64,000 nt of DNA, from IMG/VR virus record IMGVR_UViG_3300028864_000016, positions 1 to 64,000 of that record; one strand, given 5' to 3'. Position 1 is the first letter of the stretch, and each line of letters begins with the position of its first letter. Of this stretch, positions 42,831 through 58,766 are shown one piece after another. The position numbers and the translations under genes were made by a program. Under the pieces are notes generated by a model that saw only the letters and a program-made list of their open reading frames with translations, had not been told where the DNA came from and did not search any database.

Positions 42831-42942
42831 ATAGAGACACATTGAGGAGTCATGACCTTAATTAAATAGCTTATCTCAATCGGCTATGTCTCTATTTTTA
42901 TTAATGATTGAGAAATAAATTATAGAAAGAAGATTGAGAAAT
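42831..42942 (+). promoter_or_regulatory. Three-way-junction leader with loop complementary to the initiation region of the endonuclease gene
   Basis: P1 ATAGAGACA/TGTCTCTAT; loop TCTCAATC complementary to GATTGAGA at 42906 and 42932. Confidence 0.65.
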
Positions 42943-43947
42943 ATGAAAAAGACAATAGTAGATTATGATGAAACTTTATGGATGATACCATACTTTCAAG
43001 GTGGGTATGACGAAGCTAAAAAGTATACTCCACATACTTCAAAGAGAGTTAATTTTAAATGTCCTATTTGCGGAAGAGTAAAAGAGAAATCCACTACAAT
43101 AAATAGTTTATGTAATACTCATTCAATAGGCTGTATTTGTAATGATGGAATCCCATATACTGAAAAAGTAATATTTAACATTTTGGAGCAATTAAAAACT
43201 GATTTTATATATCAATTCAAAAAAATAAATGATTTATGGTGTGAAAACAAAATATATGATTTTTGTTTTGGACTAGATGGAGAAAGATATATTATAGAAA
43301 CTCATGGAATTCAACATTACGTACAAACTAATAGAAAAAATGCAAAAACATTAGAGGAAGAGCAAGAAAATGACATAATTAAAAAAGAACTTGCTCTAGC
43401 AAACGGAATTAAAAAAGAAAATTATATAGTAATTGATTGTAGATACTCAGATTTAGAGTTTATAAAACGCAATGTATTAGACAGTAATTTGGCTACTATT
43501 TTTGATTTAAGTAAGATTGATTGGAATAAAGTAGAAGAGTTTGCATTATCAAATCTAGTAAAAGAAATATGTGTTTATTGGAATGATAATGGTATTACAA
43601 TGAATGAAATTGCAGTAATGTTTAATTTATGTCCAACTACGGTGTCTAGATATATAAGTAAAGGAATAAAATTGAATTGGGTGAATAAAATAGAATTCAT
43701 AAATAATAAAGATTATTCAATGAAATTAGCACAGAAATATGCAAAACAATGTAATTCTAAGCAATTAAAAGTGTTCAAAGATGGAGTATATTTAGGTAAA
43801 TTTAACTCAACTAGGGAACTAGAAAGAATATCATTAGAAAAATTCGGTGTTAATTTTAATCATAGTGAAGTATCTAAAGTATGTAAAGGTAAATATAGAC
43901 AATATAAAGGCTATACATTTGAGTATGTAGAAAAAGAAGCATGTTAA
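42943..43947 (+). CDS. Free-standing putative homing endonuclease, paralog of 31656-33062
   Basis: CPICG, YDFCF...IIETHGIQHY...NDIIKK, IDCR, FDLSKIDWNK, NUMOD1-like tail; ATG 42943 preferred over TTG 42934. Confidence 0.75.
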   Translation: MKKTIVDYDETLWMIPYFQGGYDEAKKYTPHTSKRVNFKCPICGRVKEKSTTINSLCNTHSIGCICNDGIPYTEKVIFNILEQLKTDFIYQFKKINDLWCENKIYDFCFGLDGERYIIETHGIQHYVQTNRKNAKTLEEEQENDIIKKELALANGIKKENYIVIDCRYSDLEFIKRNVLDSNLATIFDLSKIDWNKVEEFALSNLVKEICVYWNDNGITMNEIAVMFNLCPTTVSRYISKGIKLNWVNKIEFINNKDYSMKLAQKYAKQCNSKQLKVFKDGVYLGKFNSTRELERISLEKFGVNFNHSEVSKVCKGKYRQYKGYTFEYVEKEAC

Positions 43948-45519: not shown

Positions 45520-45890
45520 ACATTGCAGACACTCATGTGAGGTTTGACAATTTATTAATTTTATAACGAATATTAAACGTGTAACGAGAATTGCATAGAA
45601 GTAGAAAATGGTTCTCTACAGACTCGAAAGAGTATCTCAGATGATGGATACACCGACCATCCTATGCAATTTAATAAAACAACTATTTTAGAAGGTATTT
45701 AAGTGAGGGCTAACACTCATTCCCCAGAGTAATTTTTATTTACTCGTCACTCCTTGAGGGGACGTTAAAATAATATTCAAGGCAAGGTTAGAATAGGGCG
45801 TGAAAACCTAACAAAGTGTTGAATTGAGTTATGATGACTTTAACAAAAAAGTAGGCGATTTGATAATGTGAAGTTATCCATCGCCTATAT
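45520..45890 (+). ncRNA. Cluster of stem-loops, putative ncRNA(s)
   Basis: AATTGCATAG/CTATGCAATT (45589-45671) enclosing three hairpins; further stems to 45888; ORF-free. Confidence 0.45.
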
Positions 45891-47650: not shown

Positions 47651-48667
47651 TTGATAACAATGAAAATAGGAAATTTAGAAGTGTATGGTATCATATATAA
47701 AATAGAAAATTTTGTCAATGGTAAAGTTTATATTGGACAAACTATAAATGGGTTTGATAAGAGATATCCTTATAATGGAGTTGATATTGAAAGAGTTTAT
47801 AATTATTCTATTTATAATAAAAATAATTACAGAAATTATAATGACCATTTATTTAAATCAATTAAAAAATATGGATTTGATTCTTTTCAGATTAATAAAG
47901 TGTTTGATATGGCATTTTCACAAGACGAACTAAATATTAAAGAACAGTGTTGGATAAAATATTACAATTCTGCAAATGGAAATTATGGTTATAATAATGA
48001 TGAAGGTGGAAATAGTGGGATTCCTAACAATGAAGCAAGAGAAAATATGAGAAATGCACAAATTAAAATTCCAATTATTCAATTAGATTTAAAAGGAAAT
48101 CTAATAAATGAATGGTCTGGAGCAAGAGAAGTTTCTAAAAAATTAAATATTAATCAATCTTGTATATGGGAATGTTTAAACAAAGGAAGGAAAACTTATA
48201 AGGGATATATTTGGATATATAAAACTGAATATTATGAATTAAATAAGAAAGTAGATTTAGATTTTTATACTTTTAATAAAGGACAAAAGATAGAAATTGT
48301 ACAATTTGATTTTCAAAGAAATATAATTAAAGTATGGGATAGTGCATTATCCATAGAAAAAGAAACTAATGGATGTTTTGATGCAAGCACAATAATAAAA
48401 GTATGTAAACATAAATTATTATCTAGTAAAGAATATATATTTTTATATAATAAAGGCAATATTAATGAAGAATTTATAAATCATATAAATATATATAATA
48501 AGTCACACAAGAAAAAAGTAGTTTTTCAATTATATGATAATAAACTAATTAAGATATGGAAGAGTGTAAAAGAAATGGTTATAAATTTTAATGATACGTC
48601 TATATATAATAAATTAAATGAAAATAAAGAAATATTAAAGGATAATATCTTTACATATGAAATTTAA
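47651..48667 (+). CDS. GIY-YIG homing endonuclease with NUMOD1-like repeats
   Basis: GIIYKIEN..NGKVYIGQT, KYG...F, E..WI..Y.S...GYN...GG. Confidence 0.9.
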   Translation: MITMKIGNLEVYGIIYKIENFVNGKVYIGQTINGFDKRYPYNGVDIERVYNYSIYNKNNYRNYNDHLFKSIKKYGFDSFQINKVFDMAFSQDELNIKEQCWIKYYNSANGNYGYNNDEGGNSGIPNNEARENMRNAQIKIPIIQLDLKGNLINEWSGAREVSKKLNINQSCIWECLNKGRKTYKGYIWIYKTEYYELNKKVDLDFYTFNKGQKIEIVQFDFQRNIIKVWDSALSIEKETNGCFDASTIIKVCKHKLLSSKEYIFLYNKGNINEEFINHINIYNKSHKKKVVFQLYDNKLIKIWKSVKEMVINFNDTSIYNKLNENKEILKDNIFTYEI

Positions 48668-51951: not shown

Positions 51952-53031
51952 ATGGGAAAAGGACAACCGTGGTTGACAGAAGATGAAGAATTTTTAAGAG
52001 AAAATTACATAGAATTATCCAAAGAAGAATTAATGAAGAGATTCAATACAAGAACTTGGAAGGGAATAAAACATAAAGCCAATGATATGGGAATAAAGAA
52101 ACAAAATAATTATGAAGATATTCCATTTGATGAATTATATGAAATAGAAAATGGAATAAAATATAAAAAGTGCAAATGTTGTAGACGATATTTGCCATTT
52201 GAAATGACATATTTTCCAAAGGATAATGCTTGTATTGATGGTTTCAGACATATTTGTAAAGAATGTAAGGGAGAAAATTTTGGATTGTCTAATGCTATTG
52301 ATTGGACGGATAAAGATGTAAAATTATTAAAAGAAATTTATTCTGATATGATTAATGAAGATATTATAAAAGAATATTTTCCAAATAGAAAATTAAAACA
52401 TTTAACTGATAAAGCATGGAAATTAGATTTAAAGAAAACCAAAGATATCTTACAACAAAGTAGATTGATGAGTGATGAAGGTAGAATTAAGGTGTCAAAT
52501 GCTAGAAAATCAGAAGGGTACTTTAATGGCGAAAATAATCCAATGTTTGGGTCTGCTAGGTTTGGAAGTCTAAACCCTAATTATAAGGGTGGTATTAGTA
52601 ATATAGAAAATGAGTTAAGAAGAAATTTAAATCAATGGAAAATAGATAGTATGAAAGATTGTAATTTCAAATGTATTTTCACAGGAGAAAGATTTGACCA
52701 TATTCATCATTTATATAGTTTTGATAGTATAGTTATAGATACTTTACAAGAATTAAATATTCCAATATATGAAAATATAAGTAATTATACAGATGTAGAA
52801 TTAAAACAGATTATAAATAGATGTATAGAAATCCACTATAGATATCCATTAGGAAAATGTATGAAAGAAGAATATCATAAAATATTTCATCAAAATTATG
52901 GATATGGAACAAATACACCTAGTCAATTTGATGAATTTTTAATTAGATTCTTTAATGGAGAATTCGATGAGCAATTAGAAGAAGAATATAGAAGTAATAA
53001 AATATTAGAAAATTTAAAAGTCGCTAATTAA
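51952..53031 (+). CDS. HNH-type putative homing endonuclease with Myb-like repeats, Zn finger and NUMOD3-like motif
   Basis: W..E...L..Y repeats; CKCC..CKEC; GENNPM/NPNYKGG; HIHHL...H..FH..YG. Confidence 0.75.
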   Translation: MGKGQPWLTEDEEFLRENYIELSKEELMKRFNTRTWKGIKHKANDMGIKKQNNYEDIPFDELYEIENGIKYKKCKCCRRYLPFEMTYFPKDNACIDGFRHICKECKGENFGLSNAIDWTDKDVKLLKEIYSDMINEDIIKEYFPNRKLKHLTDKAWKLDLKKTKDILQQSRLMSDEGRIKVSNARKSEGYFNGENNPMFGSARFGSLNPNYKGGISNIENELRRNLNQWKIDSMKDCNFKCIFTGERFDHIHHLYSFDSIVIDTLQELNIPIYENISNYTDVELKQIINRCIEIHYRYPLGKCMKEEYHKIFHQNYGYGTNTPSQFDEFLIRFFNGEFDEQLEEEYRSNKILENLKVAN

Positions 53032-53070: not shown

Positions 53071-54441
53071 GTGAAAAATATAATGGCAGATTTCAAGACG
53101 AAAGATTTAGAAGAGCAAATGAAGGGAAAGACTAGATGCACTAAATGTGGAAAGATACTTGCTGATGGTAATTTTTATACTTCTAATTCTAAATTGAATA
53201 GACATACAGGAAGATTATCATTATGTAAAGATTGCTTAACTAATTTTTATATATCATTTTTAGAAGAAACAAATGATATTAGAATATCTATATATAAATT
53301 GTGTGAAATAGTTGATTTTGTATATTTAGAAAATATATATGAGAGTTCACTAACTGAAGCAGGATGGAATAAGAATTTTACTGTGGTTGAGAATGGACTT
53401 GAGGTATGGAAAAAATATATAAAAACTATCAACTCTTTAAAAAACTATAAGGGTTATGCTTTTGAACATGGGGATAAAATTTATAATAATTGTGAAAGTA
53501 ATTTACCATCAATAGAAGTTATAGAAGAAAATGATACAAGTCTTAAAAAAATTAAAGAATTATCTGACGATGATATAGAACAAAAAGTTAGAGATAAACA
53601 GAATAAAGAAGACATAATTAGAATAATTGGTTATAATCCATTTGAAAACGAAATAGAAGAAGATAAATCAAAAATGTATGCTAAATTAATTAATATGCTT
53701 AATGAAGATACTCAAGAGGATGAATTAAAACTAGGTGCAATCATTAGTATTATAAAAGGTCAAAATCAAGAAAATAAAATAAATGATGTTATTACAAGTT
53801 TGAGTTCAGATATAAAAAGTATAAAAGATAATATAGGAACTATTAAAAGTTTAACAGATACTAAAGAGAAACTTAACAAAAGTTTACTAGCTTTGGCAAA
53901 AGATAATAAAATAAGTGATTTGTATAGTGGTCACAAAACTGTAGGTGCTAATACTTTGTCAGGTATACTAAAAAAACTAAAAGAAATAGATTTACAAGAA
54001 GCGCAGGTAAATTTATTTGATATTCAAACATCAATGGGAATGTTGCAAGTTGCCAGACTATCTGCTCAAGCTATGGTAGAGAATTTAAACTTTGGAGATG
54101 ATGATTTAATAGATATTGGTAAATTTCAAAGGTCAAAAATTGATTTCTATGAAAGTGAATATAGTAAATTAAGAGAAGAAAATAGAAAATTAAAAGTTCT
54201 TTGCAATTTTAATGATGTAGATTATTCTCAAGAAATTGAAGAAACTGAATACGCAGATGTACTTCAATATACAGAAATAGAAATAAAAAAACAAGAAGAA
54301 GATTTAATGGCTTTTAATAAAATGGTAGAAGAAGTATTGCCAATAGATACTGAGGATTATGCAAGTTTTGTTATTGAAGAAAAGGGAAAAAAAGAAAAGG
54401 AAAAGATACTGGAAAGTGTAAAAAATGGAGAATTAATTTAA
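53071..54441 (+). CDS. Putative terminase small subunit / YonG-like protein with N-terminal Zn finger
   Basis: CTKC..NFY...CKDC; directly upstream of large terminase. Confidence 0.55.
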   Translation: MKNIMADFKTKDLEEQMKGKTRCTKCGKILADGNFYTSNSKLNRHTGRLSLCKDCLTNFYISFLEETNDIRISIYKLCEIVDFVYLENIYESSLTEAGWNKNFTVVENGLEVWKKYIKTINSLKNYKGYAFEHGDKIYNNCESNLPSIEVIEENDTSLKKIKELSDDDIEQKVRDKQNKEDIIRIIGYNPFENEIEEDKSKMYAKLINMLNEDTQEDELKLGAIISIIKGQNQENKINDVITSLSSDIKSIKDNIGTIKSLTDTKEKLNKSLLALAKDNKISDLYSGHKTVGANTLSGILKKLKEIDLQEAQVNLFDIQTSMGMLQVARLSAQAMVENLNFGDDDLIDIGKFQRSKIDFYESEYSKLREENRKLKVLCNFNDVDYSQEIEETEYADVLQYTEIEIKKQEEDLMAFNKMVEEVLPIDTEDYASFVIEEKGKKEKEKILESVKNGELI

Positions 54442-54529: not shown

Positions 54530-56994
54530 ATGTCCATCACAGTTATAAACAAAAGTAACTTAACTCAAAAGAAATTAGAGGGTTATTTAAAATACAGTCA
54601 AATAATAAACTGGGGACGTCGAACGAAATCCTGTTAAATTTGCGGAGTACGCATTTGGGTTAGAACTAATGGATTATCAAAAATATGTATTTCAAATGTC
54701 TTGGGAAAAACAATTTGCATTATGGTTAATGGGGAGAAATTCTGGAAAGTCTACTTTATCATCTCCATTTATTATGACAAAAATGATGCTATTCCCAAAT
54801 TTTCAAAGTTATATTCTTTCATTAACCGCATCTCAAAGTCAGGATACTTTTTTAAAATTAGAAGCTATTGCAAAACAACAGATTGAGTCATTCTGTGGAT
54901 TAACAGATATATTTTTAGGAGAAGTATCAGCTAGTGCAAATCATGATGGATTTGTACACTCTCCACAGGGATTCCGTTGTAAATTGTATAATAATAGTCA
55001 AGTGACAACCGTATCAGGAGAAGAAGATAATATTAGAGGTAAGAGATTAAGTTTGGTCTCCTATGTAAGTAATTACATAGATAAAAGCTTTAAATTGCTG
55101 GAACACCCTTAGAGACTTATAAACTACAACGTAACTAGAAATGGTATGCGTGAATGTTTGAAAATTATAAGTATTGGGCAATCAGCATCGAAACTCCTTA
55201 AATGGAGGACGTTCAACGACTATAATAAGCTATCCTAAATAGGATAAAGGTATAGTCTACTCCGACTCTTAATTGAGTGTTAAAGTATTAGGAAACTAAC
55301 GGTATATATGCAAATTTAAACCTCTATGATGAAAGTGGATTCATAAGTGAAAATTATATTTCTACTACAAAAGCATTTACAACACAAAATTCAAGTTTCA
55401 AAATTTCCAAAGGGTTTGATGCTTCATTATTTCCAGATAATATACCTAATCAGTTATTGTTTTGTTCTTCTGCTAGTAGTACGGATTCTGCTTTTTATAC
55501 ATTATATAAAGACTGGGCTAAGTTAATGTTTGCAGGAAGTAAAGAACATTTTGTTGCTGATTTGAACTGTGAAGTTGTTATTGGTGCAACAATGAATGGA
55601 AAGAAAATGTCTGTACCATTATTGTCACGTTCAAAAGTTGATGATGATTTAAGATCGAATGCTGAAAAAGGAAATCGAGAATATTTTAACCGTTTTGATA
55701 GTGATGGAGGAAATCAACAGAAAATCAAACGGGCAGTAATTATGAAAAATTCAAAAGTAAGAAAACCTTTGTTAATAAATGAAGGAGATATAAACAGACA
55801 TATCGTACTAGCATATGACCCTAGACTTGTGGGGCTATAAGTAGTAATACTTGTAGATAAAAACTCTGTTAAAAGGGCGAAGTTTAATATAAAGAATAAA
55901 CTGATAAGAAATTCTAAGTCCATATTATGGATAGTGATAACCCCTTGCTAAATTCTATGAAAACATAGATAAAAGCCTAACGACTATCGAAAGGATAGCT
56001 ATTAACTTAATAATAGTGAATAACCAAGTAGAGTACACTTAAATGTGGAAAAGCAGAGTATCTAAATATAGTTATTTAGATAATGATATAGTCTAAACCC
56101 CTTAATAAAATATCGGGAAACCGAGGGTATTAATAATTGGCACATGATTACGATAATTCGGCAGTCTCAGCCGGAGAATATGTCTATGATGAACAGGTAG
56201 GTTGGAAATTAATAATTCAGAATTGTGTTACTTTAGTAGATTTAGGGAAAAAGAAAAAAACTCCTATGAGAACACCAGAACAGATAAAAGAAATAAAACA
56301 AATGTTATTAAATTATAATGGAAAAGGATTTGCAGATTATGAAAATATAGATGGATTAATGATAGATGCTGGTTCTGGTGGAGGTGGAGCACTTATAAGT
56401 GATTATTTTATGGAGGATTGGAAAGATGAACAAGGAATACAACATAGGGGATTAATTGATAAAGAAGTTTGTGCTGAACATGTTAATCAGTATCCCAATG
56501 CTGTTGATAAATTAAAATTAATATCACCTAAAAAGTACAGAACAGAAATGTATGATGATTTTATAGAATTATTAAATTTAGGATTAATTGAATTCACAGA
56601 TACTTATGATATGAAAGGGTATTTAAACTTACCACAAGAAGGAAAAGAAATAGAAGAAATCGACGAAGAAACTGGTGAAAAGAAAAAGGTTAAATCTATT
56701 GATTTCAAGGAATACAACCTTTCTTGGGATGAAGAATTAGCATTAAAGCAAATAGATATTGCAAAAGAAGAGCTAATTGCAACTAGAAGGTTAGGAGATA
56801 ATATAAATTATAAGTATGACTTATCACCTGATAAAAAAAGTAAAATGCATGATGATAGAGCTTATACTTTTGTAATGTTAGCATGGCATTTGAAAAATTT
56901 AAGAAGAGATGGAATAGTTAATAAAAAGGTAGAACAAACAGATTGGTCAACAGCCCCAACATTTGTATCCTCGATAAACTTTGACCGAATATGA
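54530..56994 (+). CDS. terL: Terminase large subunit; exons 54530-55047, 55311-55822, 56140-56994; 4-bp duplication frameshift at 54620-54627
   Basis: Walker A GRNSGKS; splicing restores IRGKRSNLNLYDESG and nuclease AYDPAHDYDNS; IDAGSGGG; HDDRAY; removing both introns and 4 bp gives 1881 nt = 626 aa. Confidence 0.85.
55048..55310 (+). ncRNA. Group I intron 1 in terL (263 nt, no ORF)
   Basis: Exon ends GAGAU, pairs with IGS GUCUC (U-G); P AAATTGCTGGAA, Q AATCAGCA, R TTCAACGACTA, S AGGTATAGTCTA; terminal G; frame restored. Confidence 0.9.
55823..56139 (+). ncRNA. Group I intron 2 in terL (317 nt, no ORF)
   Basis: Exon ends CCCU pairing with GGGG; ACTCTG/CAGAGT stem; R CTAACGACTA, S ATGATATAGTCTA; GAAA-capped P9-like hairpin; terminal G; frame restored. 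Confidence 0.88.
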
Positions 56995-57038: not shown

Positions 57039-58766
57039 TTGACAAAAAAACAATCCACAGAAACTCCCCTCCCACAACCACAAAAAATTGATTTAACAAT
57101 ACCTATATTAGCAGAAGGAGAAGCTAAACAAGTATCTAATATTGGTGGAAATTATATCTTGTCAGATATAGAAACATCTACTAGTAAAGATTATTTTGAT
57201 GCTAATTATATACAACAAGCTACATATGATGCACAAAGATTAAGTCATATATATAGTACTGTATTAGATAAAAATACATCATCTTATGTTACAACTATGG
57301 ATGAATTATCTTCATTAGCACAGAATACTCAAACTAGTATAGATAAAATAAAAAAAATAAATGGGATAGTTAAATATTACATAAATAAAGAAGATTTAAT
57401 TGGTAGAGTAGTTGAGACTATAGAAAATAATATAAATACGAATTATAAAATTGATTATCCATCTCCTAACGGTAAAAAAGGAACTAAACTTAAAAAAGAA
57501 CAAAAGATGGAAGATGAATTAAAAGTAGTAATAGAAAAATTCAATAAGCAAATAAATATACCTAAATTAATAGCTGATAATGCAGTCATTACATATACAG
57601 AAGGTAATTTTATATTCTATTTAATGGGGGATAGTGAGAATGGATATTCTATAGTAAATTATCCTATGGATATTACTGAAATCACACCTATGAAAATAGA
57701 TGATGATAATGTTGTATCTTTTAATGTAACTGAATTATCTGTAAGATTACAAGAAAGTAGAACTAAATACGGTAGATTAAAAACTAATAAACTTATTGAT
57801 ATTGAGAAAACAATAGAAGATGAAGTTAAAAGAAGTTATCCTACTGAAATATATGATGCATATAAAGGAAAAGACCAATACGCCTTATTAAATCCACAGA
57901 AAGTAGGATTGAATAGAATAAATTACTTAAAGGGATTATACGGATTAACACCTATTTTTAAAGCATTGTGTCCTCAATTAATGTTGGAAACAGTTGATAA
58001 AAGTGATCAAAAAGTATTAATACAAAAGACTAAAAAGATTTATTTACAATTAACTGAAAAAGAATTAATGGAAAAACCAAATGCTATTAATATGATAGGT
58101 CATGCACATGTGAGCTTACTTGAAGCCATGTCTAAAGATACTATTATATATACTGCTGATCCACAAGTTCAGGATTTGAAATTAATAGAACCTAAAACAG
58201 AATTAACAGATGAAAAAACTAAATCAGGCTATAAATTGAGAATACTTGAAGCATTGGGTATATCATTTATTAGTTCAGAAGGTTCTAAATCTATAACCAC
58301 TACTAAAATAAATTATGATGAGTTATTAAAAATGGTCAATAGAATGACTAAGAATTTAGAGCCAATACTCAATAAATATTATCAATTAATATGTGAAGAA
58401 AATGGATTTCCTATAGAATACGCACCGACTATTACAATACAATCTACAAAATTATTAGACTTAGATAATATTTTGAAAGTTGCAGATATTATGTTTTCAA
58501 AAATTGGTTTGAGTTATTCTACTGTATTAAATACATTAGGATTAGATTATGAAGTAGAAAAAAAAAATAGAATAAAAGAAAATGATGAAGGTGCAGATAC
58601 AGAAGTATTTATCCCACATGCAAATTCATATACTTCAAATTCCAACGATTTAATAAATGATAGTAAAAACACCGATTCAACTACTAATAAGAACAATAGT
58701 AAAAAAAATGAAAATGTAGATAAGCAAGAATCAGACCAATCACGTAAAGAAGCACTAAAGGTATAA
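57039..58766 (+). CDS. Portal protein (YonE-like)
   Basis: Position after terL, size, EGNFIFY and YGLTPI motifs. Confidence 0.7.
   Translation: MTKKQSTETPLPQPQKIDLTIPILAEGEAKQVSNIGGNYILSDIETSTSKDYFDANYIQQATYDAQRLSHIYSTVLDKNTSSYVTTMDELSSLAQNTQTSIDKIKKINGIVKYYINKEDLIGRVVETIENNINTNYKIDYPSPNGKKGTKLKKEQKMEDELKVVIEKFNKQINIPKLIADNAVITYTEGNFIFYLMGDSENGYSIVNYPMDITEITPMKIDDDNVVSFNVTELSVRLQESRTKYGRLKTNKLIDIEKTIEDEVKRSYPTEIYDAYKGKDQYALLNPQKVGLNRINYLKGLYGLTPIFKALCPQLMLETVDKSDQKVLIQKTKKIYLQLTEKELMEKPNAINMIGHAHVSLLEAMSKDTIIYTADPQVQDLKLIEPKTELTDEKTKSGYKLRILEALGISFISSEGSKSITTTKINYDELLKMVNRMTKNLEPILNKYYQLICEENGFPIEYAPTITIQSTKLLDLDNILKVADIMFSKIGLSYSTVLNTLGLDYEVEKKNRIKENDEGADTEVFIPHANSYTSNSNDLINDSKNTDSTTNKNNSKKNENVDKQESDQSRKEALKV

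What the first reader, a model, noticed from the sequence alone, without database searches (positions are those of the whole stretch)
55048..56139. Two ORF-less group I introns in the terminase at catalytic motifs
Intron 1 interrupts the Ser codon of RGKR-S-NLNLYDE just before Walker B; intron 2 sits right after the nuclease Asp in YDP/AHD. Neither encodes a nuclease, yet five free-standing nuclease genes are in the window, including an HNH gene about 2 kb upstream. Inference: collaborative homing; DNA packaging depends on two splicing events.
Basis: partly seen in the sequence, partly recalled or inferred. Interest (0 to 1): 0.6.

Follow-up and report, generated by a model that had tools for sequence, protein, structure and literature searches.

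The report
Terminase gene with two introns
The DNA-packaging (large terminase) gene of this 218-kb peat phage really is split by two small protein-less group I introns placed at its catalytic motifs, which is a known kind of thing in phages; the same gene also carries a 4-base frame-breaking insert of a type that recurs across its gene family and looks like programmed ribosome "hopping".

Summary
Observation confirmed. Window 55048-55310 (263 nt) and 55823-56139 (317 nt) are group I introns: targeted Rfam RF00028 scan gives 61.3 bits (E 9e-15) and 38.4 bits (E 6e-8). Both follow a U that pairs with a G in P1, end in G, and have a guide sequence pairing with both exons. Natural intron-less alleles at 79-92% protein identity have the exons exactly contiguous at the predicted junctions. 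Neither intron has a stop-free stretch over 44 codons. The host gene is the genome's only copy of this large terminase family. Intron 1 sits 6 codons before the Walker B Asp-Glu; intron 2 sits one residue after the invariant first nuclease Asp.

This is a new member of a known kind: Twort-like Staphylococcus phages also have two group I introns in terL, one next to Walker B with a near-identical 3' end.

"Collaborative homing" with the upstream HNH-like gene is not supported. That gene is only weakly HNH-like, is not adjacent, and has homologues beside intron-less or uninterrupted terL.

New: exon 1 is frame-broken by 4 nt (CGA-A-CGA, 54620-54626). Across the family, 26 of 88 distinct terL genes carry 2-25-nt inserts flanked by matched codons, usually with a stop after the first. 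This is the signature of translational bypassing.

The parts
54530..54622 (+). terL exon 1, first reading frame: ATG with a strong GGAGG ribosome-binding site, codons 1-31 (MSITV...NWGRR)
   Evidence: Contiguous with the rest of the protein in uninterrupted relatives (A2). dN/dS against relatives is 0.08-0.13 with pS 0.5-0.6.
54620..54626 (+). Frame-breaking 4-nt insert, candidate recoding site: CGA (take-off), A (skipped), CGA (landing). Decoding resumes at AAT 54627 (NPVKF...)
   Evidence: The zero frame stops 4 codons later. Present in all six 100%-identical contigs (L022-L027) and in a metatranscriptome contig. Family-wide pattern.
54627..55047 (+). terL exon 1, second frame: Walker A (GRNSGKST) to RGKR plus the first base of the Ser codon
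55048..55310 (+). Group I intron 1, 263 nt, ORF-less, phase 1, 6 codons before the Walker B Asp-Glu
   Evidence: RF00028 61.3 bits. P1 GAGAU/GUCUC with a U.G pair at the splice site; P10 CAAA/UUUG; terminal G. Absent from L028-L037. 88% identity over 124 nt to the Twort nrdE intron; 90-95% over 60 nt to the 3' end of the Staphylococcus phage terL intron.
55311..55822 (+). terL exon 2: Walker B (NLNLYDE) to the first strand of the nuclease domain (VLAYDP)
55823..56139 (+). Group I intron 2, 317 nt, ORF-less, phase 0, between P and A of the invariant D-P-A nuclease motif
   Evidence: RF00028 38.4 bits, E 6.4e-8, below the gathering score. P1 CCCU/GGGG with U.G; 3-bp P10; terminal G. Absent from L028-L036. 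72-74% identity over 85% of its length to Enterococcus and Staphylococcus phage introns, one under a terL annotation.
56140..56994 (+). terL exon 3: rest of the RNase H-like nuclease domain (AHDYDNS ... MHDDRAY) and the stop codon
51952..53031 (+). Its nuclease identity is weak
   Evidence: PHROG HNH E 8e-4; no Pfam hit. Homologues lie upstream of the yonG-like gene in relatives with intron-less or uninterrupted terL.
53071..54441 (+). YonG-like gene directly upstream of terL
   Evidence: Relatives' orthologues carry Pfam YonG_N.
57039..58766 (+). Gene directly downstream of terL, at the portal position of the SPbeta-like module
   Evidence: Portal identity is inferred from position only. 0 of 70 distinct orthologues are frame-broken.
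42934..43947 (+). Free-standing HNH-type homing-endonuclease-like gene
   Evidence: PHROGs 9084 and 559. Paralogues occur in the relatives.
47651..48667 (+). Free-standing GIY-YIG-type homing-endonuclease-like gene
   Evidence: PHROGs 7168 and 5123. Weak Pfam GIY-YIG match. 33% identical to an ORF inside a terL insertion of relative L040.

Best explanation
The gene at 54530-56994 is the phage's only large terminase of this family (626 aa once processed). The family is found in large phages and prophages of Clostridia and Bacilli, with neighbours distantly SPbeta-like.

Two small, endonuclease-less group I introns of the type common in phages of Gram-positive bacteria have invaded it. Intron 1 lies just upstream of the Walker B strand. 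Intron 2 lies one residue after the first catalytic Asp of the nuclease domain.

Each intron's internal guide sequence pairs with both flanking exons. GTP-dependent self-splicing should therefore rejoin the exons exactly as they lie in intron-less relatives. Splicing itself is inferred, not shown.

Lacking endonuclease genes, the introns cannot home on their own. Most likely they are streamlined descendants of endonuclease-bearing terL introns. They persist because they splice cleanly, and they spread only by recombination or with an endonuclease supplied in trans during co-infection.

The mRNA has a third interruption: a 4-nt insert (CGA-A-CGA) after codon 31. I infer that the ribosome passes it by a short forward hop, or a +1 shift, of peptidyl-tRNA-Arg from the first CGA to the second. 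That would restore exactly the WGRR-NPVKF sequence of uninterrupted relatives.
For: Introns:
- Covariance-model hits.
- U.G at the 5' splice site, terminal G, and P1 and P10 pairings read from the sequence.
- Exact intron-less alleles in two related lineages.
- DNA similarity to hundreds of phage group I introns, including the Twort nrdE intron and Staphylococcus terL introns.
- No ORF in either intron.

Terminase identity and motif positions:
- PHROG terminase hits, and relatives named 'terminase' by NCBI.
- An AlphaFold model of an uninterrupted relative matches T4 gp17, Sf6, HK97 and other large terminases (Foldseek E about 1e-12).
- In that model strand 174-178 ends in D178-E179, and strand 336-341 ends in the invariant D341-P342-A343.
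- There is a single copy in the genome.

The 4-nt insert:
- It is present in every contig of this lineage and in an RNA-library contig.
- The 31 upstream codons are under purifying selection and have the only strong ribosome-binding site.
- 26 of 88 distinct family members carry short inserts or internal stops in terL. The downstream neighbour has 0 of 70. The upstream neighbour has 4 of 75 flagged, of which three proved to be a gene boundary.
- 11 of 14 independent inserts have synonymous flanking codons in register (null mean 0.83, P about 1e-11). 12 of 14 have a stop codon right after the first codon.
Against: - No spliced RNA was seen. The only RNA-library contigs cover exon 1 and could be DNA carry-over.
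- Intron 2 scores below Rfam's gathering threshold.
- Pfam TerL_ATPase is below its cut-off (17.4 against 23.7 bits), and the model's mean pLDDT is only 66.8.
- The window's own insert is a perfect tandem duplication (CGAA CGAA) with no stop codon after the take-off codon.
- No significant local RNA structure was found there (z 0.66).
- The matched codons could therefore simply reflect how the mutation arose, and the protein might instead start at ATG 54669.
Confidence: 0.85

Rival explanations
1. Collaborative homing: a free-standing nuclease of the window, in particular the HNH-like gene at 51952-53031, cuts intron-less terL at the intron insertion sites. The ORF-less introns spread with it and protect their own genome from the cut.
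For: Free-standing homing-endonuclease-like genes exist in the window. The GIY-YIG one is 33% identical to an ORF inside a terL insertion of relative L040. Relatives carry endonuclease-bearing elements at or near the same terL motifs.
Against: No nuclease gene is adjacent to terL. The HNH-like gene is only weakly HNH-like. It has homologues in the same position in relatives with intron-less or uninterrupted terL. No co-conversion signal is seen. The endonuclease-bearing element near Walker B in relatives is a different sequence, 7 nt away from intron 1.
Confidence: 0.12
2. The 4-nt break is not recoded. TerL starts at the internal ATG 54669 (MDYQKY...), and the upstream 31-codon frame is a separate small peptide or a vestige.
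For: An in-frame ATG follows 14 codons after the break, upstream of Walker A. The insert is a simple tandem duplication with no stop codon behind it. No RNA structure was found.
Against: There is no good ribosome-binding site before 54669, while 54530 has GGAGG. The codons between the break and 54669 (NPVKFAEYAFGLEL) and the 31 upstream codons are conserved as protein. In relatives, inserts of the same kind lie inside Walker A and after Walker B, where an internal restart cannot give an active ATPase. The site-A elements of Paenibacillus prophages have no start codon in the downstream frame near the break (read from the printed sequence).
Confidence: 0.3
3. The terminase gene is a decaying pseudogene of a defective phage, and the three interruptions are damage.
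For: Three interruptions in one essential gene. The record is 88% complete by CheckV and is metagenomic.
Against: All exons are open and conserved (79-92% protein identity to relatives). The introns have intact cores and matching guide sequences. The same sequence is found in 18 peat DNA runs filed under 18 studies, with half or more of its sampled words. Neighbouring genes are intact.
Confidence: 0.03

Closest known systems
Group I introns in terL of Twort-like Staphylococcus phages (e.g. vB_SscM-1, NC_047767) and other Herelleviridae (PMC11878797)
   Same: terL is split into three exons by two group I introns. The second Staphylococcus intron sits before residue -6 of the Walker B Asp (VEGVD|IDYLSLDE). 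Intron 1 here sits 1 nt into residue -6. The last 60 nt of the two introns are 90-95% identical. Intron 2 also resembles introns lying under Staphylococcus terL annotations.
   Different: The Staphylococcus intron carries an HNH endonuclease ORF; both introns here are ORF-less. The terminase families are unrelated at the sequence level, and the flanking exon DNA and guide sequences differ. Among about 100 loci sampled, intron 2's site after the nuclease Asp was seen only in this lineage.
Phage Twort nrdE and orf142 group I introns (shown to self-splice, from memory: Landthaler and Shub)
   Same: The 5' half of intron 1 is 88% identical over 124 nt to a Twort nrdE intron. Small, ORF-less, and placed at conserved codons of an essential gene.
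   Different: Different host gene and phage group. Splicing is not shown here.
Collaborative homing of ORF-less introns with free-standing endonucleases (cyanophage psbA intron with F-CphI; T3/T7-like DNA polymerase intron with an HNH enzyme; from memory: Zeng 2009, Bonocora and Shub 2009)
   Same: ORF-less group I introns in a phage genome that also holds free-standing endonuclease genes.
   Different: In the known cases the endonuclease gene is immediately next to the intron-bearing gene and its target is the insertion site. Here there is no adjacency and no co-variation.
Translational bypassing: T4 gene 60 with the mobA cassette (Bonocora 2011; bioRxiv 10.1101/2022.08.31.505936) and candidate bypass of two 10-nt inserts in Streptomyces phage Hau3 terminase (PMC10732093)
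   Same: Non-coding inserts in an essential phage gene (a terminase in Hau3). Matched take-off and landing codons. A stop or hard-to-read codon right after take-off. W-G codons just upstream, noted for Hau3 in PMC5009743 and seen here as WGR at site A.
   Different: The inserts here are 2-25 nt (4 nt in the window) and lie at five recurrent sites of a different terminase family in Firmicutes phages. They mostly use TGA or TAG rather than UUA. The window's own element has no stop. No experimental support exists.

Membership tests
Group I intron (Rfam RF00028) | Covariance-model score at or above the gathering threshold (50 bits) | tested here: met
   Intron 1 scores 61.3 bits (met). Intron 2 scores 38.4 bits, E 6.4e-8: below the threshold but far from chance. 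The default whole-window scan missed both because of its speed filters.
Group I intron (Rfam RF00028) | U at the end of the 5' exon paired with G in P1; terminal G; a guide sequence that also pairs with the 3' exon (P10) | tested here: met
   Intron 1: GAGAU/GUCUC and CAAA/UUUG. Intron 2: CCCU/GGGG and GCA/UGU. Both end in G.
Group I intron (Rfam RF00028) | Conserved core helices P3-P8, including P7 (GACUAU / AUAGUC) | tested here: met
   Full-length model alignments (positions 1-253) for both introns, with the P7 strands conserved. Covariation among homologues was not tested.
Group I intron (Rfam RF00028) | Removal restores an uninterrupted reading frame identical to intron-less alleles | tested here: met
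   L028-L037 have the exons contiguous to the base. The joined spliced model was deliberately not built or searched.
Group I intron (Rfam RF00028) | Self-splicing, or spliced RNA in vivo | tested here: inconclusive
   Four RNA runs were laid on the gene. Only two exon-1 contigs matched and no junction was covered.
Large terminase (TerL) | ATPase domain with Walker A and B plus a C-terminal RNase H-like nuclease; fold match to solved terminases | tested here: met
   Foldseek top 34 hits are all large terminases, best E about 1e-12, using the model of natural relative P0004. PHROG terminase E 2e-6. Pfam TerL_ATPase is below its cut-off.
Collaborative homing system | Free-standing endonuclease gene adjacent to the intron-bearing gene and co-inherited with the intron | tested here: not met
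   The nearest candidate is separated from terL by the yonG-like gene. It is present beside intron-less and uninterrupted terL in relatives.
Collaborative homing system | The endonuclease cleaves the intron-less insertion site | not testable with these tools
   Needs a cleavage assay.
Programmed translational bypass (gene 60 type) | Matched take-off and landing codons in register with the two frames | tested here: met
   Window: CGA and CGA. Family: 11 of 14 independent elements are synonymous and the other 3 match at positions 2-3.
Programmed translational bypass (gene 60 type) | Stop or slow codon in the A site at take-off | tested here: not met
   The window element is followed by ACG (Thr). 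In the family, 12 of 14 elements have TGA, TAG or TAA there.
Programmed translational bypass (gene 60 type) | Stimulatory RNA structure or nascent-peptide signal | tested here: inconclusive
   No significant fold at 54585-54680 (z 0.66). W-G-R codons precede the site. The peptide effect was not tested.
Programmed translational bypass (gene 60 type) | A protein product that lacks the residues of the gap | not testable with these tools
   Needs mass spectrometry of the junction peptide.

The most novel reading that the evidence does not exclude
The terminase family of these Firmicutes phages and prophages is a natural reservoir of short programmed ribosome hops. More than a quarter of distinct genes carry 2-25-nt non-coding inserts at five recurrent sites of the ATPase domain. 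Each is flanked by a matched take-off and landing codon, usually with a 'shifty' TGA or TAG. In several the insert is in frame but holds two stop codons, so neither frameshifting nor read-through would serve.

The window's gene would then need one hop plus two splicing events to make one enzyme.

The inserts may be the footprint of an arms race with homing endonucleases. The Walker A inserts lie 3 nt from the insertion point of a LAGLIDADG intein found in relatives. This would parallel T4 gene 60 and mobA. Alternatively they may act as release-factor-sensitive throttles on terminase synthesis.
Probability: 0.55. Interest if true: 0.8.

Novelty: new member of a known kind. Interest (0 to 1): 0.5.

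Why it matters
The introns add a case to a known pattern: selfish RNA elements settle at the most conserved, catalytic codons of essential phage genes, where loss is costly and target sequences are shared between phages. In this one terminase family, relatives carry an intein in Walker A and other intervening sequences 7 nt from intron 1's site and at the third nuclease motif. That makes it a compact natural system for studying competition between mobile elements for the same sites.

The short frame-breaking inserts matter more. Natural translational bypassing is known from very few cases. Here there appear to be over a dozen independent short variants, some in cultured strains (Clostridium cuniculi, Paenibacillus pini, P. 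barcinonensis). So the rules of take-off, landing and stop-codon context could be tested directly.

Tried and rejected
- Whole-window Rfam scan at gathering threshold found only a skipping-rope RNA. The introns needed a targeted scan.
- tblastn of exon 3 and of a full-length relative against 50,697 phage records found no close relative. Only about 27% identity to Bacillus phage Basilisk-type terminases over the ATPase domain.
- Sequence search of solved structures gave nothing.
- Four RNA runs were laid on the gene and no junction was covered.
- Rfam on the ~270-nt insert of relative L039 gave nothing.
- Pfam HNH, HNH_3, GIY-YIG and LAGLIDADG_3 searches of the genome gave no match above cut-off inside the window.
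- Orthologues of the window's HNH and GIY-YIG genes were sought in intron-less relatives. Only paralogues were found on incomplete contigs, so the result is inconclusive.
- A sliding identity profile showed no co-conversion tract beside the introns.
- DNA-level indel listing at about 80% identity was too noisy to use.
- A phage-encoded suppressor or quadruplet-reading tRNA was considered. The genome has no tRNA genes.
- Alternative genetic codes were considered for the in-frame TGA and TAG codons and rejected, because most inserts also shift the frame.
Exons were searched one by one, and natural intron-less relatives served as full-length proxies.
Full report
WHAT THE WINDOW IS. The window is the first 64 kb of a 218,173-bp IMG/VR virus record, estimated 88% complete. 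The same stretch is found in 18 peat DNA runs filed under 18 studies, each holding at least half of its sampled words. Relatives' neighbouring genes carry Pfam families named after Bacillus prophage SPbeta (YonG_N, YonD_N, YonJ, YonB). The terminase itself has no close relative among 50,697 sequenced phages. Its family (more than 1000 proteins) lives in metagenomic phage contigs of 120-220 kb and in genomes of Clostridium, Paenibacillus, Brevibacillus and Bacillus, where NCBI names it 'terminase'.

Reading the sequence, the terminase frame breaks after AGAT at 55047 and resumes at CAAAT 55311. It breaks again after CCCT at 55822 and resumes at GCAC 56140.
- The default Rfam scan of the whole window missed both elements.
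- A targeted scan finds RF00028 full-length twice: 61.3 bits (E 9e-15) and 38.4 bits (E 6.4e-8) (same scores).
- Both elements follow a U that forms a U.G pair in P1 (GAGAU/GUCUC; CCCU/GGGG).
- Both end in G.
- In both, the bases just 5' of the P1 guide pair with the start of the next exon (CAAA/UUUG; GCA/UGU).
- Neither has a stop-free stretch over 44 codons.

The strongest evidence is comparative. Six contigs carry this sequence at 99-100% protein identity with both introns. Ten contigs of two related lineages (79-92% protein identity per exon) have exon 1, the Ser codon, exon 2 and exon 3 contiguous to the base. Exons were searched one by one, and natural intron-less relatives (P0001, P0004) served as full-length proxies.

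TERMINASE IDENTITY AND MOTIFS. Family scans alone are weak: PHROG terminase E 2e-6, and Pfam TerL_ATPase below its cut-off. An AlphaFold model of the uninterrupted relative P0004 (18-sequence alignment, mean pLDDT 66.8) matches T4 gp17, PhiV-1, Sf6, HK97 and D6E large terminases at Foldseek E about 1e-12.
- G71-K72-S-T lies between a strand and a helix, as Walker A should.
- Strand 174-178 ends in the invariant D178-E179 (Walker B).
- Strand 336-341 ends in the invariant D341-P342-A343.
- D581-D582 precede the last helix.

Intron 1 therefore lies 6 codons before the Walker B Asp, and intron 2 lies one residue after the first nuclease Asp. The genome holds only this one copy, seen as four pieces.

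A KNOWN KIND. Both introns share DNA similarity with hundreds of group I introns of Staphylococcus, Enterococcus, Listeria and Bacillus phages.
- The 5' half of intron 1 is 88% identical to a Twort nrdE intron.
- Its last 60 nt are 90-95% identical to the 3' end of a terL intron of Twort-like Staphylococcus phages.
- In phage vB_SscM-1, terL is annotated in three pieces, with two RF00028 hits between them.
- That phage's second intron carries an HNH ORF and lies at VEGVD|IDYLSLDE. Aligned on Walker B, this is one nucleotide from intron 1's position (an inference from an ungapped alignment).
- Group I introns in terL of Herelleviridae are described in the literature (PMC11878797).

COLLABORATIVE HOMING IS NOT SUPPORTED. 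The 359-aa gene at 51952-53031 has only a weak PHROG HNH hit and no Pfam hit. It is separated from terL by the yonG-like gene. Homologues lie upstream of yonG in the intron-less L030 lineage (59-67% identity). They also lie there in several relatives whose terL is a single uninterrupted match (about 44% identity). The window's clearer endonuclease-like genes (42934-43947 HNH type, 47651-48667 GIY-YIG type) belong to multi-copy families. Those families are also present in the intron-less relatives, whose contigs are too incomplete to settle orthology. No co-conversion signal flanks the introns.

A THIRD INTERRUPTION. The ATG at 54530, behind a GGAGG site, opens a frame that reads MSITV...NWGRR and stops 4 codons later. 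The terminase continues in the +1 frame as NPVKF.... Uninterrupted relatives read WGRRNPVKF continuously. The difference is 4 nt, CGA-A-CGA at 54620-54626.

I chained tblastn matches over about 100 loci of the family and found short inserts at five recurrent sites:
- after WGR;
- at residues 41-48;
- in and just after Walker A;
- at DTFL|K;
- after Walker B.

Nearly all have the same anatomy. A codon is followed by a stop (mostly TGA; TAG at the first site), then 0-22 nt, then an identical or synonymous codon in register with the downstream frame. Skipping from the first codon to the second restores the family's protein without any indel. Examples:
- CTT TGA CAA CTT
- GGA TGA...AA GGA inside Walker A
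- CGC TAG GTT AAC TAG CGT
- CTT TGA TGA AAG CTT
- TAC TGAGG TAT

Statistics and controls:
- Of 14 independent elements, 11 have synonymous flanking codons (null mean 0.83, P about 1e-11). The other three match at codon positions 2-3. Twelve have a stop right after the first codon.
- Several are in frame but contain two stop codons, which excludes frameshifting and makes read-through implausible.
- 26 of 88 distinct terL genes are affected. The downstream neighbour has 0 of 70. The upstream neighbour has 4 of 75 flagged, of which three proved to be a gene boundary.
- The segments upstream of the inserts are under purifying selection while synonymous sites are near saturation (dN/dS 0.06-0.35).
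- The TAG-type element after WGR is shared by Paenibacillus prophages that have diverged that far, and there is no start codon in the downstream frame near it.
- The elements occur in cultured genomes: Clostridium cuniculi (three in one gene), Paenibacillus pini, P. barcinonensis and Paenibacillus sp. GCM10027627.

This is the signature of translational bypassing, known from T4 gene 60 and proposed for two 10-nt inserts in the Streptomyces phage Hau3 terminase.

The window's own element is the weakest case. It is a perfect tandem duplication, no stop follows it, no RNA structure stands out, and an internal ATG at 54669 offers an alternative start. An RNA-library contig keeps the 4 nt, so RNA editing is unlikely if that contig is indeed RNA. 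The genome encodes no tRNA.

A HOT SPOT FOR MOBILE ELEMENTS.
- Relatives carry a LAGLIDADG intein between K and S of Walker A.
- A different ~270-nt intervening sequence lies at RG|KRS, 7 nt from intron 1's site. It is ORF-less in L039 and L120 and carries a LAGLIDADG ORF in L040. It has no Rfam hit.
- L040 also has an insertion after HDDRA. It holds an ORF 33% identical to the window's free-standing GIY-YIG gene.
- The Walker A short inserts lie 3 nt from the intein insertion point. That would be expected if they protect against the intein's endonuclease, as the gene 60 insert protects against MobA. This is speculation.

VERDICT. The homing inference is not supported. The more unusual feature is the short frame-breaking insert and its family-wide pattern, which rests on comparative sequence evidence only.

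Noticed in passing
window 54620-54626; relatives L028-L037, L039, L040, L042, L054, L055, L066, L068, L070, L083, L089, L104, L110, L120, L126, L129, L144: Short (2-25 nt) frame-breaking or stop-containing inserts lie at five recurrent sites of terL. They are flanked by matched codons, usually with TGA or TAG after the first codon. 26 of 88 distinct terL genes are affected, against essentially none of the neighbouring genes.
   Followed up: yes
window 45591-45669 (+): Rfam skipping-rope RNA (RF02924), 61.6 bits, full length. It lies between the PhoH-like gene and the exonuclease gene.
   Followed up: no
own genome outside the window: G000:C1:113809-114049, 78993-79230 and 78760-78985 (loci L001, L004): More group I intron hits (61.8, 38.3 and 16.8 bits). 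One splits an integrase-like gene just before its catalytic-Tyr motif. One or two split the tape-measure-like gene.
   Followed up: partly
L039:2730-3003, L120:3000-3260, L040:1849-2991: A different ~270-nt intervening sequence lies at RG|KRS, 7 nt upstream of intron 1's site. It is preceded by T and ends in G. It is ORF-less in two lineages and carries a LAGLIDADG ORF in a third. It has no Rfam match, so its class is open.
   Followed up: partly
proteins P0017, P0043, P0073, P0096; loci L103, L106, L109, L117, L121, L122, L124, L139: Relatives carry a LAGLIDADG intein, or another 0.4-1.1-kb insert, between K and S of the terminase Walker A motif.
   Followed up: partly
L040:4264-5373: A third terL insertion in a relative, after HDDRA of the last nuclease motif. 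It holds an ORF 33% identical to the window's free-standing GIY-YIG gene (47651-48667).
   Followed up: partly
L028:2185-3390 and L028:3602 onward: In the L028 lineage, a 401-aa gene lies directly upstream of terL. It shares the window HNH-like protein's N-terminal modules and has a faint NUMOD3 motif. That lineage's terL has a 4-nt insert between codons 44 and 45. The layout recalls T4 mobA and gene 60.
   Followed up: partly
L029 (IMGVR_UViG_3300030114_000066), about 3650: This contig has the L028-type 4-nt insert plus a 4-nt deletion 13 codons later. That leaves an in-frame TGA and 12 garbled codons. It is not explained by the hop model.
   Followed up: no
L125:4193 (prophage-derived IMG/VR record): An in-frame TAA replaces the Tyr of the HDDRAY nuclease motif with no extra bases. 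It is a plain nonsense change, not a hop.
   Followed up: no
window 54584-54964: Two wetland metatranscriptome contigs match exon 1 at 100% identity and keep the 4-nt insert. They could be DNA carry-over.
   Followed up: partly
whole genome G000: No tRNA or tmRNA gene was found in the 218-kb phage genome.
   Followed up: yes
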